Shown: positions 1 to 54,153 of the stretch, in pieces
Numbering within the stretch: position 1 is the stretch's first letter
Layout of the letters: each line of letters starts with the position of its first letter
IMG/VR virus record: IMGVR_UViG_3300046787_000200
Span: 186,001-250,000 of that record
DNA length: 64,000 nt
Reading direction: 5' to 3' (one strand)
Position numbers and translations under genes: made by a program
The notes under the pieces: model-generated
The model's input: only the letters and a program-made list of their open reading frames with translations
What the model was told of the DNA's origin: nothing
Database searches by the model: none

Positions 1-1
1 A

Positions 2-355
2 TTTGAAAAGATGAAGTCTCATCCTGCAGTTAAGCAGTATAAGAACGATATCGGTTTAGATCCAAAGTACGACCAACACTTGAAGACTTACTTTGATACA
101 GCAGTTCGTCAGAATCGTTACTACAGTGAAGACTGGACATTCTGTGAAAACTGGCGTGATATGGGTGGTAAGATTTGGGTTGACAAACGTGTATTGTTAC
201 GTCACTCAGGCTCTTATGTATTCTGTATGGAAAATCAACAACACTTGATGAATACAATTGGACCTATGTATGTTCAGGAACAGCAACAAAAAGCGGCTGC
301 AGAACAGCAAGTTGTCCCGGATGCATCAGGCAACGTAACACTAAAAATCTCTTAA
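2..355 (+). CDS. C-terminal part of a glycosyltransferase-like protein (truncated by window edge)
   Basis: Frame open from the window start; YYSEDWTFC..W...GGKIWVD..V.L.H.G resembles GT-A fold phage glycosyltransferase C-termini. Confidence 0.55.
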   Translation, partial: FEKMKSHPAVKQYKNDIGLDPKYDQHLKTYFDTAVRQNRYYSEDWTFCENWRDMGGKIWVDKRVLLRHSGSYVFCMENQQHLMNTIGPMYVQEQQQKAAAEQQVVPDASGNVTLKIS

Positions 356-361
356 ATGAGT

Positions 362-381
362 AGCCCCGAAAGGGGCTTTTT
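362..381 (+). terminator. Rho-independent terminator
   Basis: AGCCCC-GAAA-GGGGCT followed by a T run. Confidence 0.9.
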
Positions 382-400
382 CATATCTACTGAATAAAGC

Positions 401-406
401 TAAATA
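401..406 (+). promoter_or_regulatory. Putative late promoter core TAAATA (T4 TATAAATA-like)
   Basis: TAAATA 4 nt before ATG 411; same core recurs before many genes. Confidence 0.6.
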
Positions 407-410
407 CTAG

Positions 411-2621
411 ATGGACTTAAAAGAATTAGACTCGTTTAAAATGTCGGATGCGATAACATTCCACGATAAACTTAATCCAAAGTTATTTCGTGGCACTCAC
501 CTACAATCTGATGTATCAGATCAATTAAAAGTTATAGCACAAGATTTCTTAGAAGAATTAGGAATTAAAGGTTTAGATGTTAAAGACATAACTATATCCG
601 GATCTAATGCGGCATATAGTTATACACCTAACAGCGATTTAGACTTACACATATTAGTTGATTTAAGTCAGTATCCAGACGATGAGATATACCAAGAGTT
701 ATTTCACGCTAAAAAGACAATATACAATGATTCACACAATATCAAAGTTCACGGAATTCCAGTAGAATTATATGTGCAAGATAGCAACGAACCTGTAATA
801 AGTTTAGGTGAGTATAGTATATTAAAAGACAAGTGGCTTAGAATTCCTACTAAACGTAGAAGTAATTTAGACCAAACTGCTACTAAACAGAAATACGAAA
901 AGTTATTGAAGCTAGCAGAATATGCGTTAAAGTCAAAGAAATTAAGTAAAGTAAAACAAATATTACAAACTATCAAACGTTATCGTCAAGCTGGACTAGA
1001 TAAAGGTGGAGAGTTTGGTCCTGAGAATCTAGCATTCAAGGCATTACGTAGTCAAGGTATTATTACTAAATTGTATGATTTGCGTGACAAATTACATAGT
1101 CAACATTTGAGTATTGAGAGTATGTATTCTAATGATGTTGATGAAGATTATCATCCAAATGGTAAGCCACCTGGACCTGAGTTTAAACCCACAATGCCAG
1201 CCGGCACTGTTAGAGTAGATGTATCAGATGTATATGATTGGTATAAGTTAGGTCAAAACATCAGTGACCTTGGTAGAGCAGATCCTAATATGTTTGGTAA
1301 AGGACCTCCTAGCACTATTATGTCATTTGGGGACGAAGATACTGAACACAAATATATCAATGACTTAGAGAAGACTGGATTAACTACAACTGACATTGAC
1401 CCAGTTGATCCTAAGCAACCTAAAGGTATGAAGCGTCAGAAGACTGACCCTACTTACAATGTGTCGGAACAAGAAACAATGCAATATGCTGCCGAAAAGA
1501 TACCGGCAACTAATCCATATGGTGGTCTTAAAGATAGACAGTATCGTGGTAGTATATCAGAAATAAGAAAAAATCCAGAACAAAATCTTAAGTCAGAATC
1601 TGGTATGAAAGAATTAGCAAGTATTGCTAAGACTATTAGTGATCCAGAAAACTGGGCTATCAGTATGACCAGTGAACCCAAGTTAGGTATCAACCCACAA
1701 GTAGGTATTAGCGAAGACACCCCTAAAGGCATTTACTTCTATCCATTGAACTATGCATTAGGTAAGACACGCTATGGAAAATTGCCTTGGGGAAATGACT
1801 ATCCCTATATTCAGTTGTTTCAATATGATCGTTCACGTGAAATGACTAAACAAACAAAAGTTGACCCTGCTAAATTAAAACAAGCATTGCTTCAATATTG
1901 TCCTGAAGAAGTAATACAGCAAGCAATTGACGATCCAGAATACGACGGAACACCATACTGGTTCATTTACGATTGTTTAAGCAGACTAGGACAAAACGAC
2001 GAAACTAATATTGTTCGTTGGAATAAAATATTGCGTGATTTAGGCTTTACTAGCGTGTATGATGATGGTGATGGTTGGATTGCTTACAACGAACCAACAC
2101 AAGGTGTTGTATTAGATCCAAGAGTTATTAAACAACACAAGACTATTGTTAATAAGAAGCAATCAGGAGTAGTTACACCTGCCGCAATTGAACAGGCTAT
2201 ATTTGACACACTTGATATAGAGTTAGCCGCTAATAGAGCGTGGCAAGCATATGACCCAGACGGCAGTAAACTCAGATCGGCAGCCAAGGAATATGCCAAG
2301 GATCCTAAATTCAAACCATATTATGGAAAGCCAGGAACAGAAGAAATATTTAATAAAGCAGAAGGCTGGGGCAGGTATGGTGCAAGACAATTATCAGATA
2401 TTGCATACGAATGGTATAAACAACAACAAAGTCAGTCAAAAGTCAATGAAGCAAGTGGATATATCCCGAGCAACGCACAGAAAAATGACCCTAGATTCAA
2501 GACTGCATTAACAGTAGATGTTAAGCCTGATAGTATCAAAAAGAACGCAAAAGCATTTGCTTGGTTGACTGATAGGGCCGGCATTCCTCCCGCAGCCAAA
2601 GCAAACGGCAAAATCTCTTAA
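411..2621 (+). CDS. Pol-beta-superfamily nucleotidyltransferase fused to several additional modules
   Basis: SGSNAAYSYTPNSDLDLHILVD (GS + DxD) and VELYVQD; further blocks after Glu-ending linkers (VDE, VSE, ISE, VNE). Confidence 0.7.
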   Translation: MDLKELDSFKMSDAITFHDKLNPKLFRGTHLQSDVSDQLKVIAQDFLEELGIKGLDVKDITISGSNAAYSYTPNSDLDLHILVDLSQYPDDEIYQELFHAKKTIYNDSHNIKVHGIPVELYVQDSNEPVISLGEYSILKDKWLRIPTKRRSNLDQTATKQKYEKLLKLAEYALKSKKLSKVKQILQTIKRYRQAGLDKGGEFGPENLAFKALRSQGIITKLYDLRDKLHSQHLSIESMYSNDVDEDYHPNGKPPGPEFKPTMPAGTVRVDVSDVYDWYKLGQNISDLGRADPNMFGKGPPSTIMSFGDEDTEHKYINDLEKTGLTTTDIDPVDPKQPKGMKRQKTDPTYNVSEQETMQYAAEKIPATNPYGGLKDRQYRGSISEIRKNPEQNLKSESGMKELASIAKTISDPENWAISMTSEPKLGINPQVGISEDTPKGIYFYPLNYALGKTRYGKLPWGNDYPYIQLFQYDRSREMTKQTKVDPAKLKQALLQYCPEEVIQQAIDDPEYDGTPYWFIYDCLSRLGQNDETNIVRWNKILRDLGFTSVYDDGDGWIAYNEPTQGVVLDPRVIKQHKTIVNKKQSGVVTPAAIEQAIFDTLDIELAANRAWQAYDPDGSKLRSAAKEYAKDPKFKPYYGKPGTEEIFNKAEGWGRYGARQLSDIAYEWYKQQQSQSKVNEASGYIPSNAQKNDPRFKTALTVDVKPDSIKKNAKAFAWLTDRAGIPPAAKANGKIS

Positions 2622-2642
2622 GTTTCCTTTATATAGTATTTT

Positions 2643-2650
2643 GATAAATA
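2643..2650 (+). promoter_or_regulatory. Putative late promoter GATAAATA
   Basis: Motif 21 nt before ATG 2672, inside palindrome 2631-2656. Confidence 0.55.
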
Positions 2651-2671
2651 CTATATCAAACGGGATTCCAT

Positions 2672-4183
2672 ATGAAAATCAGTCAAATTATACAAGAAAC
2701 AACAACGTCAGGGTCAGTAGCACCTGTAGAATTAGGGTTTGTTAAAATGCAAACACGTAATCCAAGTGTATACGGTGACACTAAAGCAGGCAACTTACTA
2801 AAAGGTAAGAAAACAAATAAGCCATTTGCTAATAGCGTAAATGAGTCTAAAATGAAAGATTTAGCTTACGATATGGAAACAATGAAGCCTGCTGAGTTTC
2901 AAAAGAAGTATGGTAAAAGCAGAGAACAAATGAAGGCTTCTCCTATCAATAAGCCTGCTCAACCACAAAAACCAACTCCACTAGTCAACGAAGCTGACTT
3001 ACAAGAAGATGATGTAATATTAGTTCCTGGTCAGGGAAGAAAAACAAAGACTGGTTTTGTACCTCACGGAGAAAGTCGTGTAGACCACGAAGTAGAAATG
3101 GCTGTCAGCGATTTGTTCAGTGCAGGTAAGAATGCTGAGAAAATCTATAACATCGTAAGAAGTATCAGTGAAGAAGAAGGTCTTGAAGGCTGGGTACAAG
3201 AGAAGATTATTAAAGCTAATGACTATCTAAACACAGTCCGTGAATACTTAGAAGGTAAACAAGTTCAAGGTATGGCGGAAGGCTTGAATGATACTGTATA
3301 TCCTAACGCAGAAGTAATCAAAAGTAAAAATGGTAAGCCAGTTGGTGAGATATATCAAGATGGCAATAGTTGGGGTGCTTTTCACTATCGAGCAGACCGT
3401 GGATATGATATGATTGACAGTAGGGAAGATGCGATAGAAGCATTGAAAGATTTACATCAAGAAACAGGTCGCAGTCGTCCAGACTATACTATAAAAGGTG
3501 TGGCGGAAGGCTTACCACAGACTCTACGCAAAGTTGTTCCCGGACACGCCAAGCGTGAAATTGATAAGAAGATGGATGCTGGAAAATTTGGCAAAACTGA
3601 TGCTGATAAAGATGCTAACTTCCAACGCTACAAAAAGATTCAAGACAAGTTAAAAGAGCAAGGTGTGGAAGAAGGCTTTGGATTGAGGGGCACCGGTAAT
3701 CCAGGTATGCCAACTCCATATGACCAAGGACGAGCAGATGCCAAAAAAGGTCGTCCATATGACAATCCATATGACCAGCCAGGCGAAGAACAAGAACATA
3801 GAAACTATCGTAAAGGCTATGAGCAGGGTAAAGAGCAAGGTGTGGCGGAAGGCGCGGAACAAGTTTACAAGGTATTGGCTGTTGACAAGAGCAACGCATT
3901 GTCCAAACAAGTGAAGTTAAAGGTAAAAGCCAGTTCATTAGATGAAGTGTTTGAACGATTGGCAATCAATGATTGGTATCCTTTAGAAATCAACGGTGTA
4001 GAAGTAATCAACGGCAAGCGCCTAAAGCAAGGTGTGGCGGAAGGTGCTAAAGTAGATCGTATGGTTAAGCACATTGAAAAGTCTGAAAAGAAATTAGGCA
4101 AGTCTGAAAAAGAAGCAGAGAACATTGCTTGGGCTACAGCTAACAAACGTGGTATGTTAGATAACAAGAATAAGAAAGCGTAA
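2672..4183 (+). CDS. Modular polyprotein with QGVAEG-delimited cassettes, probable internal head protein
   Basis: Leader MKISQIIQE; five in-frame (Q/K)G(V/M)(A/E)EG linkers between unrelated segments. Confidence 0.75.
   Translation: MKISQIIQETTTSGSVAPVELGFVKMQTRNPSVYGDTKAGNLLKGKKTNKPFANSVNESKMKDLAYDMETMKPAEFQKKYGKSREQMKASPINKPAQPQKPTPLVNEADLQEDDVILVPGQGRKTKTGFVPHGESRVDHEVEMAVSDLFSAGKNAEKIYNIVRSISEEEGLEGWVQEKIIKANDYLNTVREYLEGKQVQGMAEGLNDTVYPNAEVIKSKNGKPVGEIYQDGNSWGAFHYRADRGYDMIDSREDAIEALKDLHQETGRSRPDYTIKGVAEGLPQTLRKVVPGHAKREIDKKMDAGKFGKTDADKDANFQRYKKIQDKLKEQGVEEGFGLRGTGNPGMPTPYDQGRADAKKGRPYDNPYDQPGEEQEHRNYRKGYEQGKEQGVAEGAEQVYKVLAVDKSNALSKQVKLKVKASSLDEVFERLAINDWYPLEINGVEVINGKRLKQGVAEGAKVDRMVKHIEKSEKKLGKSEKEAENIAWATANKRGMLDNKNKKA
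3266..4044 (+). repeat. Array of five 17-bp direct repeats, consensus CAAGGTGTGGCGGAAGG
   Basis: Copies start at 3266, 3494, 3659, 3836, 4028; periods 228, 165, 177, 192 nt, all multiples of 3. Confidence 0.95.
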
Positions 4184-4184
4184 T

Positions 4185-7100
4185 ATGAGCAGTATTCTAA
4201 AAGGTTTAAACGAATCCAATTCAGTATATGGACATAGTGATCCAGATAGAGAATACGGTGCACCTGCAACGTCATACAGTAAACGTGGTCCTTATTCACA
4301 CACAGATGATGACGATGATGGTAATCCATTCGCTGAATATGAACGTCAGCAAAGAATGTTTGCTGTTGGTCGTGCTGAGAAGGCTGCAAGAGAAAAAGCA
4401 CAGCGTGATAGTGACCACGATAGATTAGCAACCGGTACTAATGAAGAACAACTTGACGAACTATCAAATGAGAAGCTAGGTCAATATAAAACAGCCGCCG
4501 CTGCCGATGCAGGTAAAGCTGATTTAGCCGGTGACTATAAGAAAGCCGATAAACGTTTTAGTGGTATCGTAAAAGCGACTAAGAAACAGTTTGCTAATGA
4601 TGCTAAAACTGTCAAAGAAGATATTAATGCAGTATATAAAGAAGCTAAATCATTACTTACTCAATTAGATGAATCTACACAGCAACAAGTTATCAATGCT
4701 CTAAAAAAGAATGTGGATGCTGAAAAAGATAAACAAAAGAGCAAATATCCAAGACTTGATAATCCTAAAATTTTAGGAACAAATAATAAAGCTAAATCAA
4801 TATACTATCCACCAAGCAAACCTAATGTAAAGAAGTTAGATAAGCCATTACCAGAAAGCTTGGGTGATCAGCTTAAATCTAAATCATTAGATGCATTGCA
4901 ACAAGTTAAACAAAATATCGAACAAAAACGTATGGCTGATTTAGAGCAGTGGGAAAAAGATTTCAAACAAAATACTGTTTCTAAGTTTACAGCAAGACAA
5001 CCAAGTTTTATGCAACAACCTAAGCAAGTTGCAAGACCACTAGAGAAGCATTCAGTATTGAAAGCAAGATTAGCACAACTTGATAAAGCTATTGAGAAGC
5101 AAGCTGTATTAGACAAGATGTTGCAACGCCTTGATGCTAAAGGTCTATTAACACCTGCAATACAATCTGATACAGATACAAGTATGTTAGTGCGTGATGG
5201 TGCAAATGATAATTATGTTTCATTAAATCAGAAGTTGGACAAAGCATTAGAGTTCGTTAAGAACAGATTAATGACTAACAAAACCGCTTTTGCTAAACCA
5301 AAAGCGATTGATGAAAATGAAGAACTAGATGAAAATCTACACAAGTGGTTCAAAGAGAAGTGGGTTCGTTTCGGTCCAGATGGTAAGATTCGCGGTGACT
5401 GCGCTAGAGGTGATGATAGTGAAGGTAAACCAAAATGCTTACCACAAAGTAAAGCACATAGTCTAGGCAAGAAGGGTCGTGCTAGTGCGGCAAGTCGTAA
5501 GCGTAGAGAAGATCCTAATCCAGAGCGTAGTGGCAAGGCTATCAATGTCAATACTAAGAAAAATAGTAATGAAAGTGTGGTCCTTGGGCGAGATGAAGGT
5601 AACTTTGTAAGTGATACACCAGTCAATCTAGGTGGTGTAGTAGTTAAGAATTTAGGTATCGGTGATATTGTAAGTTACTTCGGACAAAAAGCAAAAATAA
5701 TTGCTATGTCTAAAACAGGAAATACATCTCGCATTACAATACCAAGTGGTATGGGTGGTGTTACTAAAGATGTTCTTACTAAAGATTTGAAACGCACAAG
5801 TTTATCTGAGGAAGAGTTAGACGAAGCCTGTTGGAAAGGTTATCACAAAGAGGGTAACAAGAAAATGTTTGGCAATCCATATCCTAACTGTGTAAAGAAT
5901 ACTAACGAAGAATTAGATATGACAGAAGGCTGGAAAGAAGAAGCACAAGATTTAGAAGACTGGTCTAAAGAAGTCAACATGAGACTGTACAGAGCGCATG
6001 AGAGTCAGCGCCCTGCACTAGCAAGACAACTAAGCAAATTAGAACAAAAACACTTTGGTAGTGAATTTACACATCCAAACTTAACTAATGTAGTTTGGTC
6101 AGCATTACGAGCATTACAAAAAGGTGAGATGGTTCACTATGATCCACAACGTGTAGGTCAAATGCCATTTGGTAATATAGTAGGTGATGATGCTAAAATC
6201 ATTGCACAGTATAATATAACTCGTGATGAACTTGCCGGTTATCGTATGTTACACGATAAAGGTATGGTAGATAATCTTGAACAATTTTTAAAGTTACGCC
6301 GTTTAGTACGTGCAAAATCATGGCCACTAGAGTATTATGAAGAATTAGAGAAGTTATCAACAGAAGAAGCATGGTTAAAAATGGCCAATGATTTGAATTG
6401 GTCCAAAGATGATATGAACGAATCAGTTCAAGCCAAAACTGATGACAACTTACGAGCATACTACGCACAACGTAAAGCAGAAAAAGAAAAGCAACATAGC
6501 GAAAGTTGCCCACATTGCGGTGGCGAAATGGTTAGTGAAGAACTAATGAATGAAAAGAAAGATGCTTGCTACTATAAAGTAAAGAGCCGTTACAAGGTAT
6601 GGCCAAGTGCTTATGCTAGTGGTGCGTTAGTTAAGTGCCGTAAGAAGGGCGCAAGCAACTGGGGCAACGGTGGTAAGAGTAATGAAAGTGTTGCGGAAGA
6701 CGATGCCGGTGATGTTGAACAGCGTATGATTGCTAAAATAGAAAAAGAAAAACAGCGTCTAGCAAAACTAAAGCAGACAGATCCAGAAGCATACAAGCGT
6801 GAAATAGAAAAGCGTAAAACTTCATCTAGAGTTCCTCCTGTGTCTACATTTGAAGATCAAGGTGTGGCGGAAGGGCCTGGTTTTGATAAATGGGCAGATG
6901 ATAGAGCGGCATCACAACTACACAAACTAAAACCCGGGATGGTTCAAGACCGCAAGACCGGCAAGTGGTATGATCCTAACAAAGAGTTTGACAAGAAGAT
7001 GAACAGTCCTGAAGTCATGGCTCAAATGAAGCGTATGGCACAGAAAGAAAGCATCGAAGAAGACCAACTTGATGAAAAGTGGACTAAGAAATACAAAGAT

Positions 7101-7199
7101 AGCATCAACTGTAGTAATCCAAAAGGCTTTAGTCAAAAAGCACATTGTGCTGGTAAACAGAAAAATGAAAGTGCAATATTGAAAGGGCTTAAATTATGA
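4185..7199 (+). CDS. 1004-aa modular polyprotein, probable internal head protein
   Basis: Short basic or Cys-containing modules separated by LDE/NES/MNE/VAE linkers; one exact 17-bp repeat. Confidence 0.7.
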   Translation: MSSILKGLNESNSVYGHSDPDREYGAPATSYSKRGPYSHTDDDDDGNPFAEYERQQRMFAVGRAEKAAREKAQRDSDHDRLATGTNEEQLDELSNEKLGQYKTAAAADAGKADLAGDYKKADKRFSGIVKATKKQFANDAKTVKEDINAVYKEAKSLLTQLDESTQQQVINALKKNVDAEKDKQKSKYPRLDNPKILGTNNKAKSIYYPPSKPNVKKLDKPLPESLGDQLKSKSLDALQQVKQNIEQKRMADLEQWEKDFKQNTVSKFTARQPSFMQQPKQVARPLEKHSVLKARLAQLDKAIEKQAVLDKMLQRLDAKGLLTPAIQSDTDTSMLVRDGANDNYVSLNQKLDKALEFVKNRLMTNKTAFAKPKAIDENEELDENLHKWFKEKWVRFGPDGKIRGDCARGDDSEGKPKCLPQSKAHSLGKKGRASAASRKRREDPNPERSGKAINVNTKKNSNESVVLGRDEGNFVSDTPVNLGGVVVKNLGIGDIVSYFGQKAKIIAMSKTGNTSRITIPSGMGGVTKDVLTKDLKRTSLSEEELDEACWKGYHKEGNKKMFGNPYPNCVKNTNEELDMTEGWKEEAQDLEDWSKEVNMRLYRAHESQRPALARQLSKLEQKHFGSEFTHPNLTNVVWSALRALQKGEMVHYDPQRVGQMPFGNIVGDDAKIIAQYNITRDELAGYRMLHDKGMVDNLEQFLKLRRLVRAKSWPLEYYEELEKLSTEEAWLKMANDLNWSKDDMNESVQAKTDDNLRAYYAQRKAEKEKQHSESCPHCGGEMVSEELMNEKKDACYYKVKSRYKVWPSAYASGALVKCRKKGASNWGNGGKSNESVAEDDAGDVEQRMIAKIEKEKQRLAKLKQTDPEAYKREIEKRKTSSRVPPVSTFEDQGVAEGPGFDKWADDRAASQLHKLKPGMVQDRKTGKWYDPNKEFDKKMNSPEVMAQMKRMAQKESIEEDQLDEKWTKKYKDSINCSNPKGFSQKAHCAGKQKNESAILKGLKL
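6858..6874 (+). repeat. Sixth copy of the 17-bp repeat, exact consensus
   Basis: CAAGGTGTGGCGGAAGG, in frame as QGVAEG. Confidence 0.95.
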
Positions 7200-7315
7200 G
7201 AGATTACACATTTACAGCAGAATGCAACAGCGGTCAGGTAAAGACCTTTACATTTCAGGCTGCCAACTACAGAGCCGCTAGAACTAAACTAGAAGAATTA
7301 ATAGCGGCAAACTAA
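7196..7315 (+). CDS. 39-aa hypothetical protein (not in ORF track)
   Basis: ATGA overlap with upstream stop; MRDYTFTAECNSGQVKTFTFQAANYRAARTKLEELIAAN. Confidence 0.6.
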   Translation: MRDYTFTAECNSGQVKTFTFQAANYRAARTKLEELIAAN

Positions 7316-7359
7316 AATGAAAGACTATGACTTCTATTGGAATAGGTTAGGTTACCCTA

Positions 7360-7800
7360 ATGGCACTAAGTTGGCGAGATAAACAAAAACAATTTTTAGT
7401 TGATTCAATAGAATTCGACCAAGATGCTAGGATTTTAAATTGGATTGATAATAAACCAACATACTTTTTAGGTGACTCTAATTATTTCAAACAACATGCC
7501 TCCGAAACTAATATCAATAGTGCAACACAAGCAATATTGATATTCAATCATCAAATACTAACCAGTGATTTAGAAAATATATTAAAAGCAACAATACATA
7601 TTCCTAAATTATGTATTGCTATTAATAAGTTTTTAATCATACCGGACAAAACATTTGAATGTAATGACAATTATGATATTGCATTATTTGATTTTGTGCA
7701 GAACATTTTTCCCGACAGGCATATAGATTATTATTATAACAAAAACGTTAAAGATACTAATTTTAATTTTGCAAGCCCCACAACACAATTTTACCTATGA
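7360..7800 (+). CDS. Hypothetical protein (AT-rich)
   Basis: 146-aa ORF. Confidence 0.6.
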   Translation: MALSWRDKQKQFLVDSIEFDQDARILNWIDNKPTYFLGDSNYFKQHASETNINSATQAILIFNHQILTSDLENILKATIHIPKLCIAINKFLIIPDKTFECNDNYDIALFDFVQNIFPDRHIDYYYNKNVKDTNFNFASPTTQFYL

Positions 7801-8375
7801 TATTGAAATCTGATATCAGAACTAATTACCTACTATATAAAAACTCTCAACCATTGTTTAAAAAATGGATTAAAGAGAAACACAAGACAATACTCACTGA
7901 TAAGTATTCAAAGTTTATATTAGGCAATTTACCTCAGGGTAGAAGTGTATGGTTTGATTCATTTGGTTATTGCTTCAAAACATTCAATAAAGACATATAT
8001 TCGGTTGAACTAAGGATGCGTGAATCGTTTTTAAAGAATTTACCGGATATTCTATGTGAGGATGATTTCTATGAAAACATGGATGCACACAGATATTATG
8101 CTAATACATTGAATCCAAAATCAATAGTGTTATATGATTCAGGAATGTTAAAGTATTATAATATTGACGAATATGTGTCGTTCTTTAAAAATATGCAAGA
8201 AATATATAACGTTCCTATTTTTATTAAAATTAATTTAGTATTTTTAGATTTTAACAGACTAAAATACAGATACAGTGACATTGGTAATATCATAGAAAAT
8301 ATGATTCCTAATTCAAAAATAGAGTTTAAAGTCAATAATTTGAATAGGACAGCACTACATTATTGGGAACCCTAA
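7797..8375 (+). CDS. Hypothetical protein (AT-rich)
   Basis: 192-aa ORF, ATGA-coupled. Confidence 0.65.
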   Translation: MILKSDIRTNYLLYKNSQPLFKKWIKEKHKTILTDKYSKFILGNLPQGRSVWFDSFGYCFKTFNKDIYSVELRMRESFLKNLPDILCEDDFYENMDAHRYYANTLNPKSIVLYDSGMLKYYNIDEYVSFFKNMQEIYNVPIFIKINLVFLDFNRLKYRYSDIGNIIENMIPNSKIEFKVNNLNRTALHYWEP

Positions 8376-8428
8376 TCAATTTATAAAAGATAGATTTGTT
8401 GATAAATACTATGATATAGAGGCATATT

Positions 8429-8869
8429 ATGTTATCGGACAATTTAAAAGTATTATTAGCAAGTACACAAAGTTTTGCAATCAAGTCACAGAACTTCCAT
8501 TGGAATGTTGAAGGTAGTAACTTTCCCCAATACCATGAATTTTTTGATACACTATACAGTGACATAAGTGGTACCATTGATCGTATAGCTGAATACATCA
8601 GAATACTAGGTCACTACACACCTGGTAGCTTAAAACGCTACTCAGAACTAAGTGTCATTGAAGACCAAATAAAAATTCCACGTGCTGAATTAATGTTTGC
8701 TGAATCATTACAAGACTGTGAAACAATGCTTCAGTTAGTAACCGCAATGTTTGATGAAGCGGCAGACGAAAAGCAACACGGTATAGAAAACTATATGGCT
8801 GAATTACAAGATTTGTACGGCAAGAAAGCTTGGTTCATTCGTTCAGTATTGAAGAAAGAACGTGAATGA
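8429..8869 (+). CDS. dps: Dps/ferritin-like DNA protection protein
   Basis: NFHWNVEG..F..YHEFF and D.IAE.IR.LG ferroxidase signatures; TAAATA at 8403. Confidence 0.9.
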   Translation: MLSDNLKVLLASTQSFAIKSQNFHWNVEGSNFPQYHEFFDTLYSDISGTIDRIAEYIRILGHYTPGSLKRYSELSVIEDQIKIPRAELMFAESLQDCETMLQLVTAMFDEAADEKQHGIENYMAELQDLYGKKAWFIRSVLKKERE

Positions 8870-9735
8870 GAGCAAATGAATTTTTAATTGAACGTGCAAC
8901 TAGTGTAGTGTTTCATTACACCGGTACTAATGCCGCATTAAAGATTCTAAAATCAGGTAACTTTGAATTAGCAAGCACAACAGGTAATCGTAGCGAAGAA
9001 CAATATGCACCAAAAGGTTATCCATACTTCTTAAGCTTAACACGCACACCAACTGGTGATTATCATAGATATGTTGGTACAGGTGGCGTTATGTTTAAGA
9101 TTGACGGTGATTGGCTAAACAATAGATATGTTGTAAAGCCAATAGACTATTGGGATCGTGCTTGGTTACATAGTGATGGTACACGTTCACGTGAATCAGA
9201 AGATAGATTGTTTAGTAAACAACCCACAGTTCCAGTTACACCTGTAACAGAAGTTCACGTATTGTTAAAAGAACAAGATGAGTTTCGTAGTCCACAAACA
9301 CGACAAATAATGATATCCGCTAAACAAAGAGGTATCCCGGTATATCTTTATACCGATGAGAAAGCTTGGAGACTATTAGATACACGTAAGAGTATTCAAC
9401 CAAGCCAAGCTAAAGATGTATTAAAAGGTCAACAAGGTCCTGGCTACAGTCGTAAGCCAACTGATTTTGTTAAACCCTGGATTGAGTTGATTGAAAAGGA
9501 TCGTGAAGAATATCTAAGCGATAGAGCTAAAAGACAACTAAAGAACTTATTATGGTATCCTGATGCGTCCGGAGATCATAACATAGGTGTAGATTTATCT
9601 AACGCACGTAAGCCAGACGCAGGAGATAGAGCGAGTGCCGTGAAGTTGATTAAATATATGAACGACAATAATATTAAGAATACAGTAGAACTTAAAAACG
9701 CTATTGTCGATAAATGGAATAAGATAAAAAAATGA
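8866..9735 (+). CDS. Putative ADP-ribosyltransferase-fold protein with capsid-targeting-like leader
   Basis: MRANEFLIE; FHYT ... LSLTR ... ESEDR (H-S-ExE arrangement). Confidence 0.5.
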   Translation: MRANEFLIERATSVVFHYTGTNAALKILKSGNFELASTTGNRSEEQYAPKGYPYFLSLTRTPTGDYHRYVGTGGVMFKIDGDWLNNRYVVKPIDYWDRAWLHSDGTRSRESEDRLFSKQPTVPVTPVTEVHVLLKEQDEFRSPQTRQIMISAKQRGIPVYLYTDEKAWRLLDTRKSIQPSQAKDVLKGQQGPGYSRKPTDFVKPWIELIEKDREEYLSDRAKRQLKNLLWYPDASGDHNIGVDLSNARKPDAGDRASAVKLIKYMNDNNIKNTVELKNAIVDKWNKIKK

Positions 9736-10604
9736 GATTAGTTGAGTTTGTTACTGAAGCCGTCGGAGGTGATTACATTTATCATAGTGTAGCACAGCCT
9801 AACCAGATCTGGAACATACTTAGAAAAGGTGTAATACAACCACAAATATCTGAAACAGATGAAGAAGGTGGTTGGGAGATACCAGTTATCAGTGCAAGTA
9901 GAAGTCAATATTATAGATACCCATATGGTGGTGGTAGTATTCAACTTGTTTTAGATAGAAATGCATTACGTCAAGCCGGTTTCAAAGTATTGCCATTCTC
10001 TTATATGCAGTTTTACAATCAAGCTGATGGCAGTGGCCCTACAGCAAGTAATCCAATGTATAAACAAGAAACAGAAGAACGTATCTATCATCCAAAAGGT
10101 ATAGGTATTCCTGTTAAGAAACCATATGTCGTGGGTATACAGATACGTAAAGAGCTAATGGATAAAGTTCCAGAAGGTCTATTGAAGTTGATTAGTGATG
10201 CTGGATTAACATTAACACCAATGAAAGATGATCCTACTAACAGAGAAAAGTTTTCACGTAAGTTAGCTAAACCACCATTGAATCCGGCACACTATTACAA
10301 ACCAAATGAAGTTCAAATAGTAGCAAGGCGAGACAATCCAAATGGATATACATTATGGAGTGTTAAACCTGATGGCTACATCTTGCCGATTGGTGATACC
10401 GGTGAGTTTAATAAGGGCGGTTTGACAAAACAAAAAGCAATAGATGCATTTAAGAGACTTACCGGTGCCAATCCAAAAGAAGTTCAAAACGTTATTAAAT
10501 ATGATGGTACGTTTAACCCAAATTATTACCACGATGAATCCGGCGGTCCAAGCAGAGAACTATACAACTGGGTTCCTCAGATAGTAAATAGTAATACACA
10601 ATGA
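9732..10604 (+). CDS. Second putative ADP-ribosyltransferase-fold protein with capsid-targeting-like leader
   Basis: MRLVEFVTE; IYHS ... ISASRS ... ETEERI. Confidence 0.5.
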   Translation: MRLVEFVTEAVGGDYIYHSVAQPNQIWNILRKGVIQPQISETDEEGGWEIPVISASRSQYYRYPYGGGSIQLVLDRNALRQAGFKVLPFSYMQFYNQADGSGPTASNPMYKQETEERIYHPKGIGIPVKKPYVVGIQIRKELMDKVPEGLLKLISDAGLTLTPMKDDPTNREKFSRKLAKPPLNPAHYYKPNEVQIVARRDNPNGYTLWSVKPDGYILPIGDTGEFNKGGLTKQKAIDAFKRLTGANPKEVQNVIKYDGTFNPNYYHDESGGPSRELYNWVPQIVNSNTQ

Positions 10605-10614
10605 GATATTTAAA

Positions 10615-12993
10615 ATGAGAGCATTAGACTTTATATTAGAAAATACAGAGGTACTTGACGAAGTAGCGATGAATCCTACTCGTTTAAAGCAAGAAGCTGC
10701 CAAGACTGGTGCTCAAGCTGGTATGGAATTCGAAATGATTGTTCCAAACGTTAAATCAGAGGACGTAGATAACGATCCAGAACCAGACTATGATAGTGAT
10801 GAATCTGCACGTGATATAGATGATATAGCTAGGTTCTTTCGTGACGGCGAATATAACAGTCGTAGACAAATAGATGAGTTAGTAGACCAACTACGTGATG
10901 GTTACTATGAGTGGGCTGACGAACAACGTAGCGAACAATGGGATCGTGAAGGAAAAGATTATTTACGTGAATACATTGAAAATGAAGGCGAGTTTGATGA
11001 AGATGCTGCCTTAGATGAAGCTTATGACCAATTAGGTTTTACTGATGAACAAAAAGAAGCGGCAAGTAAAGCCGGTGCAACAATAACAAAACGCTCAGAT
11101 GCAGTAGGTAATGAAGATTGGGAGCATTGGAAAGAAGCACAAGATTTAGTTGGCGAAAAGTTAGACCAGTTTGTTGAAGAACAATGGGATGAGAGAGGTC
11201 GCCTATACGACAATGCATATGAAAAGTGGACTGATGAAGCTGATTGGCCTGATGAAAGTGATTGGTTAGACAGTCAAAACCTTCAGACAATGCAAGACAT
11301 TGAAAGTAACTATGATGTTACTTGGCCACATTGGCAATATCCTGATTCAGGTGGCGAATTGAGTATTGACGATGTTGCTGATGAGTTCAGCAGAATGATC
11401 GGTAAGCCAATCAATTCAAGTGAGCGTTATCACGGTGCTCGTAGAGAAGCAGGCCATTATGTTGTTGAACCTGATGGTAGCTTAGAACCAGATGATAGTG
11501 ATGATGCTGGATTAGAGTTTGTAAGCCCACCAATGCCCATAGATGAAATGTTAAGTGACTTCAATAAAGTTGTTGCTTGGGCAAAAAGTAAAGGTTGCTA
11601 TACTAATGATAGTACTGGATTGCACATAAATGTAAGCGTACCTGATTTTAGTAGAGATAAACTTGACTATGTTAAGTTAGCAATATTATTAGGTGATGAG
11701 TATGTTCTAAAAGAGTTTGGTCGTGAAGGTAATACTTACACTAAGAGCGCATTGAAACGAGTTAAAGATAACATTAGAAGTCGCCCAGAAGATGCCAAAC
11801 GTTTGTTAGACAGTATGAAGGCAGGCTTAAATGATATTGCTAGTAAAGCTGTTCATAGCGGTGCTACAGACAAATATACAAGTATCAACACTAAAGATGG
11901 TTATATTGAGTTTCGTAGTCCCGGTGGTGATTGGTTAGATGCTGATATCCCTAAGATTGAGAATACATTGTTACGATTTGTTGTAGCATTAGATGCCGCA
12001 GTTGATCCACAGAAGTATAGAAAAGAATATCTAACAAAGCTTTATAAGTTGTTGTCACCGAGCAAAGACGCTACTGATACTATTCAATACTTTACTAAGT
12101 ATGCCGCAGGTGAGTTACCAAAGGCTGCATTACGTAGCTTTGTTAAACAAGCACAGTTAGAACGTAAGATTAAATCTGATAAAGAACAAGGTAAGAAGTA
12201 TTGGTGGCGTGTTGATAAAGAAGGTCAAGGACGTTCTGGTGCAAGCTTAGAAGTTGTTGCTACAAGTAAAGAAGAAGCATTAGAAAAAGCAGCCAGTGAA
12301 TGGAATATTCGTTTAGGTGCATTGACACAAGCTGATGCTTATCCTATTCGTAAGTTTGAAGAACCTGCAAGCAATACACCAAGATATGAAATCTTCAACT
12401 TGAATACAAACAATAGTGTAGAAGATGCTGAAGGAATTACCAATGATAGAGACGCATTGATTCGATTAAATGATTATTTACAACATGGTCCACATAGATT
12501 ATCGGCTGATCAGGCTAGAAATACATTTGGAATTAGACGTGTAGGTGATAGTGAACCTATACTAGCACAACCAATTAGTCGAGGTGGTAATGAACCACAG
12601 TCAAGGTTTGAAATCTATCGTATCAGTGACGGTCGATCATTAACAAGACGAGGAGAACCATTACAAATCGTTGCTAATGGTGTTGAGGGTGCTGAACGTC
12701 AGATGATAGAAATAATACGCAGTCTCGATTTTGGCGCACCTGAACTATTTGCAGTTCGTAGTGTAATAGAACCTCCGGCGCAGCCGGGCAGCACAACTGA
12801 CATACAACAACAACGTGCGGCAGGTGGTGCATTCACTGGTGCTTGGAAAGTATTAGCTGATGGACGTGAAGTATATCGTTTCAGTGGCGTAGGCAATCAA
12901 CAAAGTGATGCTAATCGTGTAGCTATTCAATGGCTAAGAAACAACGGGTACGATCAAAGTACCGAAGTTGAAGTTGTACCTATAATGAGCTAA
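10615..12993 (+). CDS. Putative amidoligase (COOH-NH2 ligase family) with acidic insert and C-terminal repeated domains
   Basis: GMEFE, EPDGSL, GLEFVSPP, STGLHINVS, YIEFRSPGG; leader MRALDFILE. Confidence 0.8.
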   Translation: MRALDFILENTEVLDEVAMNPTRLKQEAAKTGAQAGMEFEMIVPNVKSEDVDNDPEPDYDSDESARDIDDIARFFRDGEYNSRRQIDELVDQLRDGYYEWADEQRSEQWDREGKDYLREYIENEGEFDEDAALDEAYDQLGFTDEQKEAASKAGATITKRSDAVGNEDWEHWKEAQDLVGEKLDQFVEEQWDERGRLYDNAYEKWTDEADWPDESDWLDSQNLQTMQDIESNYDVTWPHWQYPDSGGELSIDDVADEFSRMIGKPINSSERYHGARREAGHYVVEPDGSLEPDDSDDAGLEFVSPPMPIDEMLSDFNKVVAWAKSKGCYTNDSTGLHINVSVPDFSRDKLDYVKLAILLGDEYVLKEFGREGNTYTKSALKRVKDNIRSRPEDAKRLLDSMKAGLNDIASKAVHSGATDKYTSINTKDGYIEFRSPGGDWLDADIPKIENTLLRFVVALDAAVDPQKYRKEYLTKLYKLLSPSKDATDTIQYFTKYAAGELPKAALRSFVKQAQLERKIKSDKEQGKKYWWRVDKEGQGRSGASLEVVATSKEEALEKAASEWNIRLGALTQADAYPIRKFEEPASNTPRYEIFNLNTNNSVEDAEGITNDRDALIRLNDYLQHGPHRLSADQARNTFGIRRVGDSEPILAQPISRGGNEPQSRFEIYRISDGRSLTRRGEPLQIVANGVEGAERQMIEIIRSLDFGAPELFAVRSVIEPPAQPGSTTDIQQQRAAGGAFTGAWKVLADGREVYRFSGVGNQQSDANRVAIQWLRNNGYDQSTEVEVVPIMS

Positions 12994-12994
12994 T

Positions 12995-13861
12995 ATGAGA
13001 GCAACAGATTTCATAATCGAACAAGAAAATCCTAAAGTAGATTTGACACCTAACTATCCTAACTATCAAGTATTAGTAGGTGAGTATGTTGGTGTAAAGA
13101 AGAATAGATTACTATTCAAAATACTTTCAGCAGAACTAAAGCCAGGACAAGGTGCAACAGATAAGATTGTTAAATCATTAGCAACTGGATTACCATTTGG
13201 TATTGATATTGAACGTGTTAGAAATCGTAAAGTATTAGAAGATTTAACTCGTAGGGGCTTCTTAGGTGGATTAGGCGCAGCCGCATTAGGTGCCACAGGA
13301 GTAGCACAAGCTAAACCAACACAGCCTGCACAACAAAAATCTGAGCCAGTTAATATGTTGAGTAATCATCCTCAACACGAAGCACTATTGCAACGTGCGG
13401 CTAAAGCTGCCGGCATTAAAGGCACGGAGTTAGCACAGTTCATGGCACAAACCAACCATGAATCATGGGACTTTAGTAGATTAAAAGAAAAAGGTATGGG
13501 TAAAGGTTACTTTGCTAAAAAGTATGACCCTAAGTTTGCCCCACAGACAGCTAAGATATTAGGCAATAAACAAGTAGGTGACGGGGAGAAGTATCGCGGT
13601 AGAGGATTCATTCAATTGACAGGACGTGATAATTATCGTATGGCACAACAAGCATTAAAGATACCGTTGTTACAACAGCCCGAGTTAGCAGAGCGTCCAG
13701 ATGTTGCGGCAAAGATTGCTGTATGGTATTGGAATACACGAGTTAAGCCCCATATACAAAACTTTAACGACACTAAAGCAGTAACGCAAAAGATTAATCC
13801 AGCAATGCGTGGCTTACAAGATAGACACGCAAAGTTTATTGATTACAAGAATATTTTATAA
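12995..13861 (+). CDS. GH19 lysozyme/chitinase-family hydrolase with leader and internal twin-arginine segment
   Basis: FMAQTNHES and YRGRGFIQLTGRDNY; MRATDFIIE; TRRGFLGG at residue ~85. Confidence 0.85.
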   Translation: MRATDFIIEQENPKVDLTPNYPNYQVLVGEYVGVKKNRLLFKILSAELKPGQGATDKIVKSLATGLPFGIDIERVRNRKVLEDLTRRGFLGGLGAAALGATGVAQAKPTQPAQQKSEPVNMLSNHPQHEALLQRAAKAAGIKGTELAQFMAQTNHESWDFSRLKEKGMGKGYFAKKYDPKFAPQTAKILGNKQVGDGEKYRGRGFIQLTGRDNYRMAQQALKIPLLQQPELAERPDVAAKIAVWYWNTRVKPHIQNFNDTKAVTQKINPAMRGLQDRHAKFIDYKNIL

Positions 13862-13871
13862 AGAGAGTTAG

Positions 13872-14309
13872 ATGAGAAAAATAATAACAATAGCATTACT
13901 AGCAATATCAACAGTTGCGTTCGCACAAAAACAAAAGCCAATGAATATCTATGATTTCCCAATCACCAGAGTTATTGACGGCGATACAGTAGCGTTTCAA
14001 GCACCGTTCTTACCACCACCATTAAAGCAAGAGTTAAGTATACGTGTATTTGGTGTTGATACACCTGAAAAGGGTCATAGAGCAATGTGTCCACAAGAAG
14101 ACCAACGTGGTCAGGCAGCTACTGCATTTACAAAAAATGCAATTACCAAGGCACAAAAACGTCAAGTAGCTATTGCTGATTGGGATAAATATGGCGGTCG
14201 TGTTTTGGGTGACGTATTATTAGATGGACAAAGTTTAAGAATGATGTTAATACAGAACGGATTTGCAAGAGAATATTACGGAGAAGCTAAGACTTCTTGG
14301 TGTAATTAA
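13872..14309 (+). CDS. Thermonuclease (SNase-like) with signal peptide
   Basis: RVIDGDT, IRVFGVDTPE, DKYGGRVLG; hydrophobic N-terminus ending AFA. Confidence 0.9.
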   Translation: MRKIITIALLAISTVAFAQKQKPMNIYDFPITRVIDGDTVAFQAPFLPPPLKQELSIRVFGVDTPEKGHRAMCPQEDQRGQAATAFTKNAITKAQKRQVAIADWDKYGGRVLGDVLLDGQSLRMMLIQNGFAREYYGEAKTSWCN

Positions 14310-14354
14310 TAATATAACGATTTTTAGATAAATACTTACTATAAGGAGACTATT

Positions 14355-14642: not shown

Positions 14643-14647
14643 TCTAA

Positions 14648-15220: not shown

Positions 15221-15221
15221 A

Positions 15222-16163: not shown

Positions 16164-16207
16164 CCAAATAACTTTCAATCATTAAATGAATGTGATATAA
16201 TCTATAA

Positions 16208-54143: not shown

Positions 54144-54153
54144 GGAGTTAAGA

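What the first reader, a model, noticed from the sequence alone, without database searches (positions are those of the whole stretch)
3266..4044. In-frame cassette array: unrelated mini-proteins joined by a nucleotide-conserved 17-bp repeat that also encodes a protease-site-like linker
Seen: CAAGGTGTGGCGGAAGG occurs at 3266, 3494, 3659, 3836 and 4028, and again exactly at 6858 in the next gene. Degenerate versions lie near 1458, 5571 and 6684. Periods are 228/165/177/192 nt, always in frame, and the spacers encode mutually unrelated 55-76 aa units. Synonymous positions are held fixed using GTG and GCG codons, whereas the surrounding AT-rich genes mostly use GTA/GTT and GCT/GCA. This points to constraint on, or copying of, the DNA itself. 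Known: T4 prohead protease gp21 cuts after Glu in hydrophobic-x-E sites and processes internal head proteins. Inference: the repeat serves both as a recombination/insertion site and as a VAE|G cleavage site. That would give an integron- or CRISPR-like expandable array of effector peptides that are packaged as one polyprotein, cut apart in the head and injected. I know of no description of such a system. No integrase is visible in the window.
Basis: partly seen in the sequence, partly recalled or inferred. Interest (0 to 1): 0.92.

Follow-up and report, generated by a model that had tools for sequence, protein, structure and literature searches.

The report
In-frame module-swapping junctions in phage proteins
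Two adjacent genes of an uncultured giant phage are strings of small unrelated protein modules joined by a junction whose DNA letters are kept fixed, and related phages have gained, lost and reordered whole modules exactly at these junctions, which also look like cutting sites for the phage head protease.

Summary
The repeat is real, but only three of the six copies are exact (3836, 4028, 6858). The copies at 3266 and 3494 have one mismatch and 3659 has two. All are in frame in ORF 2672-4183 and ORF 4185-7199 of a ~352-kb T4-superfamily jumbo phage.

The same word, AAG CAA GGT GTG GCG GAA GGC, recurs in hundreds of in-frame copies in related viral contigs. It keeps codons that are rare in those genes (GTG 85% vs 19% background, GCG 88% vs 8%), while its flanks are unrelated.

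Among 108 orthologues that share the ORF2 leader I found 57 different module arrays built from 52 module families. Nucleotide homology between orthologues breaks within a few bases of the word. The canonical word marks variable junctions. Fixed junctions have decayed and keep only x-x-Glu followed by a small residue.

That residual signature fits the T4-type prohead protease. Protease, scaffold and capsid genes flank array genes in some relatives, and a cyanophage homologue was detected in virions.

Best reading: these are polyvalent head-internal proteins whose junction serves both as a short-homology recombination site and as a likely cleavage site. Recombination at the junction is well supported. 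Cleavage, packaging and injection are inferred. It is neither an integron nor a CRISPR array.

The parts
411..2621 (+). ORF1, 736 aa: first of three adjacent modular proteins. N-terminal nucleotidyltransferase-like module followed by further modules.
   Evidence: Weak NTP_transf_2 hit and phrog_36119 on aa 15-234. The syntenic orthologue in L206 is 1166 aa. It has the same first and last modules plus extra DUF5661, TonB_2 and zincin HEIGH modules.
2641..2654 (+). Promoter-like motif TTGATAAATACTAT about 20 nt upstream of ORF2. It resembles the T4-type late promoter core.
   Evidence: The same 14-mer lies upstream of the ferritin-like gene at 8399-8412, and GATAAATACT occurs at 14328. Function is inferred only.
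2672..4183 (+). ORF2, 503 aa: a conserved leader followed by five small modules joined by junction words.
   Evidence: Translation. 798 homologues of the leader, 279-697 aa long. 57 distinct arrays among 108 orthologues.
2672..3280 (+). ORF2 leader (aa 1-203). It starts with a 9-residue peptide ending I-Q-E, followed by TTTSGSVAPV, and ends in a helical hairpin.
   Evidence: 60-91% identical across orthologues. M1, K2, T11, T12, G14 and A17 are invariant and E9 is >=90% conserved in 52 sequences. The T4 CTS format comes from PMC9026906.
3266..3282 (+). Junction word copy 1 (1 mismatch; QGMAE|G).
   Evidence: Homology to orthologues L201/L204/L205 stops at 3262 and to L202 at 3285.
3281..3508 (+). 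Module 1 (76 aa).
   Evidence: The same module lies at other array positions in L036, L085 and L087. A distant version is in L088, L101, L028 and L048.
3494..3510 (+). Junction word copy 2 (1 mismatch; KGVAE|G).
3509..3673 (+). Module 2 (55 aa, Lys-rich).
   Evidence: Found at the ends of other arrays in L006 and L051.
3659..3675 (+). Junction word copy 3 (2 mismatches; QGVEE|G).
3674..3850 (+). Module 3 (59 aa, Gly/Pro-rich, probably disordered).
   Evidence: Family L.
3836..3852 (+). Junction word copy 4 (exact; QGVAE|G).
3851..4042 (+). Module 4 (64 aa, small alpha/beta).
   Evidence: Close copy in L044 in a different array.
4028..4044 (+). Junction word copy 5 (exact; QGVAE|G).
   Evidence: Homology to four orthologues resumes at 4025-4026.
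4043..4183 (+). Module 5 (46 aa): the usual terminal module of ORF2-type arrays ('A').
   Evidence: Found in 81 pieces in the orthologues. It is preceded by E-G in 52/52 cases, behind 24 different upstream heptads.
4185..7199 (+). ORF3, 1004 aa: a longer modular protein. It starts with a 10-residue peptide ending L-N-E, and several Cys-rich modules are shared with cyanomyovirus T4-GC119 proteins.
   Evidence: The same modules occur in other orders in L080, L084, L102 and L206.
6681..6698 (+). Degenerate junction NESVAE|D.
   Evidence: The following module sits behind a canonical QGVAE|D in ORF2 orthologues P0036/P0037.
6699..6872 (+). Module 'Q' (58 aa): the same module occurs in ORF2 orthologues of other phages.
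6858..6874 (+). Junction word copy 6 (exact; QGVAE|G) in ORF3.

Best explanation
ORF1-ORF3 are 'beads-on-a-string' polyvalent proteins of a T4-superfamily jumbo phage. They are most likely head-internal proteins.

Small, mostly unrelated modules are joined by a junction that has two layers. At the protein level the only universally retained feature is (aliphatic or small)-x-Glu followed by Gly/Ser/Asn. That is the kind of site cut by T4-type (Peptidase_S77) prohead proteases, so the string is probably cut into separate modules during head maturation.

At the DNA level, the canonical junction (K/E)QGVAE|G is written with one fixed 17-21-nt word. Because the word is the same, in the same frame, at many junctions in many related genomes, short-homology recombination between any two words removes, inserts or swaps whole modules without breaking the reading frame. 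Such recombination could be crossover, annealing or template switching during mixed infection or replication.

Modules flanked by intact words stay mobile and spread. Junctions that stop exchanging decay at synonymous and then non-essential residues and keep only the x-x-E|small signature.

Shown: the repeat, its fixed codons, its strict in-frame occurrence, array variation, breakpoints at the word, mosaic identity across words, and the association of the canonical word with variable junctions.

Inferred: the recombination mechanism, proteolytic cleavage, packaging and ejection.
For: Fixed DNA.
- An unbiased degenerate scan gave 118 KQGVAEG sites in long ORFs. Their codon use, against the background in the same ORFs, is GTG 85% vs 18.6%, GCG 88% vs 7.7%, AAG 84% vs 32.5%, first Gly GGT 95% vs 45%, and last Gly GGC 75% vs 29%.
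- The result is unchanged after collapsing to 76 junction clusters with unrelated flanks: 55/76 keep the exact 14-mer.
- At conserved V/A/G residues, the same-codon fraction is 0.38-0.43 in modules of 30-70% aa identity and 0.71-0.76 in junctions.
- Internal control: the N-E-S junction peptide in the same genes uses varied codons.
- All 310 copies of the 14-mer in the viral loci lie in an open G-V-A-E-G frame. Flanks carry no information.

Shuffling.
- 57 arrays from 52 module families among 108 orthologues.
- Module order is permuted in L080, L084, L102 and L206.
- Nucleotide homology between the window and four orthologues stops at 3262-3285 and resumes at 4025-4026, which are the first and last words.
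- An 81-codon insertion is bounded by GGTG of two junctions.
- Identity jumps across words: 96% vs 88% for L201/L204, and 98% vs 75% for L202/L205.
- The canonical word sits at 57/125 junctions touching rare modules and at 4/85 junctions between common modules.

Cleavage and packaging.
- Glu is invariant at 52/52 junctions before module A, with 24 different upstream heptads.
- ORF3 starts with a 10-residue peptide ending L8-x-E10, and ORF2 with I7-x-E9. This matches the T4 CTS and gp21 L/I-X-E rule (PMC9026906).
- Array genes lie beside Peptidase_S77 protease, scaffold and Gp23 capsid genes in L130, L028, L012 and L048.
- Cyanophage T4-GC119, which shares ORF3 modules, was detected in purified S-SM1 virions with 13 peptide counts. 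Its gene length varies from 276 to 2985 nt among 16 phages.
Against: - No protease, capsid or portal gene lies in the 64-kb window. Here the array genes sit near replication and metabolic genes.
- T4-GC119 was not detected in Syn9 virions.
- No experimental cleavage data exist.
- The AF2 model of ORF2 is poor (mean pLDDT 52), so it cannot show that junctions are exposed.
- 17-21 nt is short for efficient homologous recombination. Some crossovers use only 4-7 nt of shared sequence, and one breakpoint (3262) faces a partner with no word at all.
- Close orthologues do carry synonymous variants of the word, such as GTA GCA, so conservation is strong but not absolute.
- The counts come from related sequences and are not independent.
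- A reader of the RNA or of the DNA other than the recombination machinery is not excluded.
Confidence: 0.55

Rival explanations
1. The word is read at the RNA level. It could be a translational pause or SD-like element (AGGUG and GGAAGG), made of codons that are rare in these genes, that slows the ribosome between modules for co-translational folding. It could also be a site for an RNA-binding factor or nuclease. On this reading the module shuffling is ordinary illegitimate recombination filtered by selection for frame.
For: Conservation is position-specific: the same amino acid uses GGT at one position and GGC at the other. The codons are rare in these genes. All copies are on the coding strand and in frame.
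Against: Fixed junctions between common modules have lost the word and keep only x-x-E|small, so the word is not needed for making the protein. There is no conserved secondary structure (z-scores -0.6 to +0.2) and no Rfam match. Homology breakpoints coincide with the word.
Confidence: 0.12
2. An active, enzyme-driven cassette system. The 17-21-nt word is the target of a sequence-specific nuclease or recombinase encoded elsewhere in these genomes, for example a Seg-type homing endonuclease. Double-strand-break repair from a co-infecting genome then moves modules.
For: A SegE-like GIY-YIG/NUMOD3 endonuclease gene lies directly upstream of the array gene in L028, L012 and L048. The cyanophage homologue T4-GC119 is described within an endonuclease-flanked mobile cassette (PMC3037559). 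The word has the length of a homing-endonuclease or guide target, with sharp edges.
Against: No endonuclease or recombinase was found next to ORF1-3 in the window or in syntenic L206. Seg enzymes normally cut near their own insertion site, not a dispersed word. Crossover points vary within the word.
Confidence: 0.13
3. The proteins are processed polyproteins but not head-internal cargo. They would be cut in the cytoplasm by a phage zincin peptidase module, by another Glu-specific protease, or by a host protease, and the modules would act inside the producing cell.
For: The L206 orthologue of ORF1 carries a zincin HEIGH module with weak M48/U49 hits. The array genes in the window lie among replication and metabolic genes. 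Polyvalent proteins often carry their own metallopeptidase (PMC5512222).
Against: The window's ORF1-3 have no HExxH motif. The junction signature matches the S77 rule, and S77 genes flank arrays in other loci. N-termini are CTS-like. One homologue was found in virions.
Confidence: 0.12
4. Ordinary multidomain proteins with an uncleaved flexible linker. The repeat would be a by-product of recent internal duplication or concerted evolution within one lineage.
For: Low-complexity, charged linkers are common. Some close orthologues show inherited synonymous variants of the word.
Against: Flanks of the copies are unrelated. The word is kept across a clade whose DNA polymerase is only 63-88% identical and whose modules are saturated at synonymous sites. 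Words within one array are not homogenised. Glu is invariant at junctions while every other position varies.
Confidence: 0.08

Closest known systems
Polyvalent proteins of phages and conjugative elements (Iyer, Burroughs, Anand, de Souza, Aravind 2017; PMC5512222)
   Same: Both are single polypeptides with many unrelated domains and highly variable architecture between relatives. Catalytic effector-type domains appear occasionally: NTase, GNAT, zincin peptidase, NT5C and LysM were seen here or in relatives. Delivery with the DNA and proteolytic release are proposed for both.
   Different: That paper mentions no linker, no conserved junction and no cyanophage or jumbo-phage arrays of this kind. 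Modules here are mostly tiny (38-130 aa) and without Pfam matches. Junctions are uniform and conserved at the DNA level. Release is more likely by the head protease than by an internal metallopeptidase.
T4 internal head proteins (IPI-III, Alt) with capsid targeting sequence, processed by gp21 (PMC9026906)
   Same: Both have a short N-terminal peptide ending hydrophobic-x-Glu and cleavage-type sites after Glu. The proteins are small, charged and variable between related phages. A gp21-type protease gene neighbours array genes in some relatives.
   Different: T4 encodes each internal protein as a separate gene with its own targeting peptide. Here many modules are concatenated in one ORF with internal junctions. 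Nothing has been shown experimentally.
PeSL / PmSL motifs mediating modular shuffling in T4-like phages (Arbiol et al. 2010, PMC2839356; Comeau et al. 2014, PMC4122927)
   Same: Both are short conserved DNA motifs that flank variable units, lie at indel and replacement breakpoints, and are proposed to act through homologous recombination or mini-circle excision and integration. Degraded copies mark old events.
   Different: PeSLs are intergenic promoter plus stem-loop elements that shuffle whole genes. The word here is 17-21 nt, has no stem-loop, lies inside ORFs in one frame, shuffles protein modules and also encodes a functional peptide.
Cyanomyovirus T4-GC119 (Syn9 gp114, S-P4 'structural protein', S-PRM1 705-aa protein)
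   Same: They share several ORF3 modules. Gene length is highly variable (276-2985 nt), the protein was detected in S-SM1 virions, and the gene sits in a mobile region next to an endonuclease.
   Different: The cyanophage proteins read here (Syn9 gp114, S-PRM1) lack the QGVAEG word. Several of their module boundaries end in Glu followed by a small residue.
Junction motifs of polymorphic toxins (VENN of CdiA, DPxGL of Rhs) and short direct repeats flanking antigenic-variation cassettes (my own knowledge, not tested here)
   Same: A conserved peptide-coding motif demarcates variable modules, supplies homology for cassette replacement and, in Rhs, is also a cleavage site.
   Different: Those systems swap one C-terminal toxin with its immunity gene, or one expression-site cassette. 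Here multiple unrelated modules are strung in series, no immunity genes are evident, and the setting is a lytic phage.

Membership tests
Integron | IntI tyrosine recombinase next to the array | tested here: not met
   Pfam and PHROGs scans of ORFs from 11 to 16804 and of larger ORFs across the window found no integrase or recombinase.
Integron | attC sites: imperfect inverted repeats that fold as hairpins | tested here: not met
   The repeat is 17-21 nt with unrelated flanks. Folding of five sites gives z-scores from -0.63 to +0.22 and no common structure.
Integron | Cassettes are separate promoterless ORFs | tested here: not met
   The units are in-frame parts of one ORF. All 310 copies of the word in viral loci are in an open frame.
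CRISPR array | Non-coding repeats, invader-derived spacers, cas genes | tested here: not met
   The repeats are coding. The spacers are protein modules with homologues in other phage proteins. No cas genes were found in the scans listed above.
Polyvalent proteins (Iyer et al. 2017) | 2-15 distinct domains in one phage polypeptide | tested here: met
   ORF2 is a leader plus 5 modules. ORF3 has about 10 modules. ORF1 and its L206 orthologue are multi-module.
Polyvalent proteins (Iyer et al. 2017) | Domain architecture varies freely between relatives | tested here: met
   57 arrays among 108 orthologues. Module orders are permuted.
Polyvalent proteins (Iyer et al. 2017) | Effector-type catalytic domains | tested here: inconclusive
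   Weak NTP_transf_2 in ORF1. Zincin HEIGH, DUF5661 and TonB_2 in the L206 orthologue. GNAT, LysM and NT5C in other arrays. Most modules have no family.
Polyvalent proteins (Iyer et al. 2017) | Delivered into the host with the DNA | not testable with these tools
   Only indirect evidence: head-gene neighbourhood in L130/L028/L012/L048 and the S-SM1 virion detection of T4-GC119.
T4-type head-internal proteins processed by gp21-type protease | N-terminal ~10-residue targeting peptide ending hydrophobic-x-Glu | tested here: met
   ORF3 has L8-N9-E10. ORF2 has I7-Q8-E9, with E9 >=90% conserved. The format comes from PMC9026906. This is a sequence resemblance only.
T4-type head-internal proteins processed by gp21-type protease | Peptidase_S77 prohead protease in the same genome | tested here: inconclusive
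   None in the 64-kb window. It is present beside array genes in L028, L130 and L012: Pfam Peptidase_S77 at 2.9e-26 for L028 and 1.5e-37 for L130, and a gp21 tblastn match in L012. The rest of the 352-kb contig could not be read.
T4-type head-internal proteins processed by gp21-type protease | Cleavage after Glu at the junctions | not testable with these tools
   The sequence is consistent: E-G in 52/52 junctions before module A, with P3 mostly V/M/I/L/A.
PeSL-type shuffling motifs | Conserved short DNA motif at indel and replacement breakpoints | tested here: met
PeSL-type shuffling motifs | Intergenic early promoter plus stem-loop composition | tested here: not met
   The word is intragenic and coding, with no stem-loop.
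Polymorphic toxin systems (CdiA VENN / Rhs DPxGL) | Variable C-terminal toxin with adjacent cognate immunity gene | not tested
   No immunity-like small ORFs are obvious after ORF2/ORF3: ORF3 starts 2 nt after ORF2 ends, and the next gene starts at 7360. No search was made.

The most novel reading that the evidence does not exclude
A clade of aquatic jumbo and T4-like phages maintains a dedicated in-frame cassette-exchange system. A 17-21-nt 'junction word' acts as a portable, phase-preserving recombination site for protein modules, the protein-domain analogue of PeSLs or integron cassettes. The same word encodes the head-protease cut site that releases each module as a separate ejected effector. 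Modules flanked by intact words would behave as selfish, horizontally spreading units, giving the phage population a combinatorial, rapidly reshuffled payload of injected mini-proteins.
Probability: 0.35. Interest if true: 0.9.

Novelty: new variant of a known kind. Interest (0 to 1): 0.78.

Why it matters
If correct, this is a natural system of phase-compatible 'exon-like' shuffling in a virus without introns. One short DNA word would solve two problems at once: moving protein modules without breaking the frame, and separating them again after translation.

It would explain how head-internal or polyvalent proteins diversify so fast. It would give a simple sequence handle (the word) for cataloguing hundreds of unknown mini-proteins that are candidate host-takeover or anti-defence factors. 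It would also extend the PeSL idea of recombination-promoting motifs from gene boundaries to domain boundaries.

It is directly testable in laboratory systems by protease co-expression, recoded-word exchange assays and virion N-terminomics.

Tried and rejected
- Rfam scan of 1-9000 at a permissive threshold: only sub-threshold chance hits, none at the junctions.
- RNA folding of five junction contexts: no common or unusually stable structure.
- PDB sequence searches with ORF1-3: nothing.
- Pfam on ORF2/ORF3 and on seven long arrays: almost nothing.
- AF2 of ORF2 with a 52-sequence alignment: mean pLDDT 52. All five junctions fall in low-confidence stretches, but so does half the protein, so the result is uninformative and no fold search was run.
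- Megablast of 25 kb against cultured phages: no close relative.
- Exact 17-mer in 596 Gb of bacterial genomes. The hits are single, mostly in high-GC genomes and in unrelated genes (pheT, malate dehydrogenase, a TonB-dependent receptor, VgrG-like), which is chance level. Only one short MAG contig (L234) looks like a phage array.
- High-GC viral hits (L074, L127, L128, L190, L192) are likewise single, isolated matches in high-GC contigs, probably chance.
- T4 late promoter TATAAATA is not enriched in the window. The related motif at 2641 is noted only as a lead.
- Full-text search for the peptide GVAEG found no phage paper.
- I considered similarity of the word to the 3' end of 16S rRNA and to Chi sites from memory and dropped both as unconvincing. 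Neither was tested.
Full report
**Observation.** The 17-mer CAAGGTGTGGCGGAAGG is exact at 3836, 4028 and 6858. It is present with one mismatch at 3266 and 3494 and with two at 3659. That is six matches where 0.04 are expected. All six are in frame: five in ORF 2672-4183 (503 aa) and one in ORF 4185-7199 (1004 aa). They read Q/K-G-V/M-A/E-E-G, and the sequences on either side of the copies are unrelated. Spacings of 228, 165, 177 and 192 nt give units of 76, 55, 59 and 64 aa. In the window's own genes GTG is 9.9% of Val codons and GCG is 7.6% of Ala codons, so the observed spelling of QGVAE has a prior of 0.28% per site.

**What the window is.** All large ORFs are on one strand and GC is about 37%. 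The family-B DNA polymerase at 17116-19824 is 43-49% identical to those of Atu_ph07, Phosso, CBB and RaK2-type jumbo phages. No cultured phage is close at the DNA level, and the source contig is 352,012 bp. The neighbourhood of the finding holds a ferritin-like gene, an amidoligase, a GH19 endolysin and an SNase. Farther along are MetK, an FAD oxidoreductase, UvdE, a 5'-3' exonuclease and a DNA ligase. No head genes, integrase or recombinase were found in the window.

**The word is conserved as DNA across a phage clade.**
- 185 distinct contexts show no information outside (A/G)A(G) CAA GGT GTG GCG GAA GGC.
- To remove ascertainment bias I scanned with the degenerate pattern AARCARGGNGTNGCNGARGG. 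Among 118 sites in ORFs of at least 150 aa, codon use against the background in the same ORFs is GTG 85% vs 18.6%, GCG 88% vs 7.7%, AAG 84% vs 32.5%, first Gly GGT 95% vs 45%, and last Gly GGC 75% vs 29%.
- After collapsing sites that share either flank, 76 junction clusters remain and 55 of them keep the exact 14-mer.
- In alignments between loci, conserved V/A/G residues keep the same codon in 38-43% of cases inside modules of 30-70% aa identity, but in 71-76% of cases inside junctions.
- The other recurrent junction peptide in these genes, N-E-S, is spelled in several ways.
- All 310 copies of the 14-mer in the viral loci lie in an open G-V-A-E-G frame, and 125 of 136 successive spacings are multiples of three.
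- 137 of the viral loci share a non-array gene with the window, for example the polymerase at 63-88% aa identity. So this is a family-level clade, not one species.
- Bacterial genomes give only chance-type single hits.

**The arrays are shuffled at the word.**
- The ORF2 leader (aa 1-200) has 798 homologues at 60-91% identity whose total lengths run from 279 to 697 aa.
- Behind the leader, 108 of them carry 57 different arrays made from 52 module families.
- Close relatives differ by whole modules. P0002, P0005 and P0006 carry 0, 1 and 2 extra modules between the same two neighbours.
- At the nucleotide level the window is 87-90% identical to four orthologues up to 3262-3285, which is the first word at 3266-3282. 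It then has no homology until 4025-4026, which is the last word at 4028-4044.
- An 81-codon insertion in L207 relative to L206 is bounded by the GGTG of two junctions.
- Identity jumps across words: 96% vs 88% for L201/L204, and 98% vs 75% for L202/L205. That is the signature of recombination between diverged lineages.
- ORF3 modules occur in permuted order in L080, L084, L102 and L206.
- The 58-aa module at 6699-6872 of ORF3 is found in ORF2 orthologues P0036 and P0037.
- ORF1 is modular too. Its L206 orthologue has the same ends but extra DUF5661, TonB_2 and zincin HEIGH modules.

**Two layers of constraint.** Junctions between the common, fixed modules are degenerate (RSVTE|N, KGAME|S, QGATE|S, KDANE|S, EMGE|G). 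Junctions touching rare modules are canonical. The counts are 57/125 canonical versus 4/85 (odds ratio 17), with the caveat that the sequences are related. Before the usual terminal module, 52 of 52 junctions are E-G behind 24 different heptads, and P3 is mostly V, M, I, L or A. The protein therefore needs only (aliphatic or small)-x-Glu|small. The full word is a property of junctions that are still exchanging. This argues that the synonymous conservation reflects a DNA-level process (recombination or copying) rather than translation or protein function.

**Why a head protease.**
- T4 gp21 cuts after Glu in L/I-X-E, and T4 internal proteins carry a 10-residue targeting peptide whose processing depends on residues 8 and 10 (PMC9026906).
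- ORF3 begins with a 10-residue peptide with L8 and E10. ORF2 begins with a 9-residue peptide with I7 and E9, and E9 is at least 90% conserved.
- Using T4 head proteins fetched from its GenBank record, I found array genes inside head-gene clusters in several word-bearing loci.
- In L130 the order is array protein (an ORF2-leader relative), a 135-aa ORF, Peptidase_S77 protease, scaffold, Gp23 capsid protein.
- In L028, L012 and L048 the array gene follows the Gp23 capsid gene and a SegE-like endonuclease gene. In L028 and L012 the protease and scaffold genes lie just upstream of the capsid gene.
- ORF3 shares modules with cyanomyovirus T4-GC119 (Syn9 gp114, S-P4 'structural protein'). Sullivan et al. 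2010 list T4-GC119 as detected in purified S-SM1 virions (13 counts) but not in Syn9. Its gene length ranges from 276 to 2985 nt.
- A late-promoter-like motif precedes ORF2.
- None of this is direct evidence of cleavage or packaging for the window's proteins.

**Comparison with known systems.** Integron and CRISPR membership fail on every defining feature tested. The proteins meet the descriptive definition of polyvalent proteins (PMC5512222), whose authors do not mention linkers or these phages. The DNA word behaves like the PeSL motifs that mediate gene-level shuffling in T4-like phages (PMC2839356, PMC4122927), but it is intragenic, in frame, lacks a promoter and stem-loop, and also codes for a functional peptide. 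From my own knowledge, the VENN and DPxGL junctions of polymorphic toxins are functional analogues. I found no paper describing the QGVAEG junction.

**Verdict.** In-frame cassette exchange at a DNA-conserved junction is well supported. The recombination mechanism is likely short-homology rather than site-specific. The cleavage, packaging and injection half is plausible and now has contextual support, but it remains inference. I rate it a new variant of known kinds (polyvalent or internal head proteins, and motif-mediated modular shuffling), with high interest.

Noticed in passing
L028:7870-8592, L012:3241-3987, L048:1956-2678: A SegE-like GIY-YIG/NUMOD3 homing endonuclease gene sits between the Gp23 capsid gene and the word-bearing array gene in three separate contigs. 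The cyanophage homologue T4-GC119 is also reported next to an endonuclease in a mobile cassette.
   Followed up: partly
window 2641-2654, 8399-8412, 14328-14337: A repeated promoter-like motif TTGATAAATACTAT (GATAAATACT at the third site) lies just upstream of ORF2, of the ferritin-like gene and of a small ORF. It resembles the T4-type late promoter core.
   Followed up: partly
window 4185-4217 and 7164-7199: ORF3 starts MSSILKGLNE|S and ends ...NESAILKGLKL. The same peptide occurs at both ends, and SILEGIE-type versions occur inside arrays of relatives. This looks like a second junction type, and it is not fixed at the DNA level.
   Followed up: partly
window 2696-2730; L028:6534-7751: The conserved stretch right after ORF2's putative targeting peptide (TTTSGSVAPV; TTAGSVATV in relatives) resembles the N-terminal arm of the L028 Gp23 capsid protein (ASAGSTVSGNIATL). 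It may be mimicry of a scaffold- or protease-binding segment. The resemblance is weak.
   Followed up: no
L206:4699-8199: The 1166-aa orthologue of ORF1 contains a twin-arginine-like signal stretch (RRGFLKGMGAAAVAGAAG), a TonB_2-like module and a zincin HEIGH module that the window's ORF1 lacks.
   Followed up: partly
window 8429-8869, 10615-12993, 12995-13861, 13872-14309, 29575-30750, 31795-32895, 37849-38880, 54127-55503: Auxiliary genes of the phage: ferritin-like protein, amidoligase-domain protein, GH19 endolysin, SNase, FAD oxidoreductase (DAO), S-adenosylmethionine synthetase, UvdE UV-endonuclease and ATP-dependent DNA ligase.
   Followed up: partly
window 16853-17116: An 88-aa ORF ending where the TTG-started DNA polymerase ORF begins is conserved in 82 of the viral loci at 74-91% identity among the best matches. 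Its function is unknown.
   Followed up: no
window 338-382: A GC-rich hairpin followed by a T run (gtagccccgaaaggggcttttt) lies between the first ORF and ORF1. It is probably an intrinsic terminator, so ORF1 probably starts a new transcription unit.
   Followed up: no
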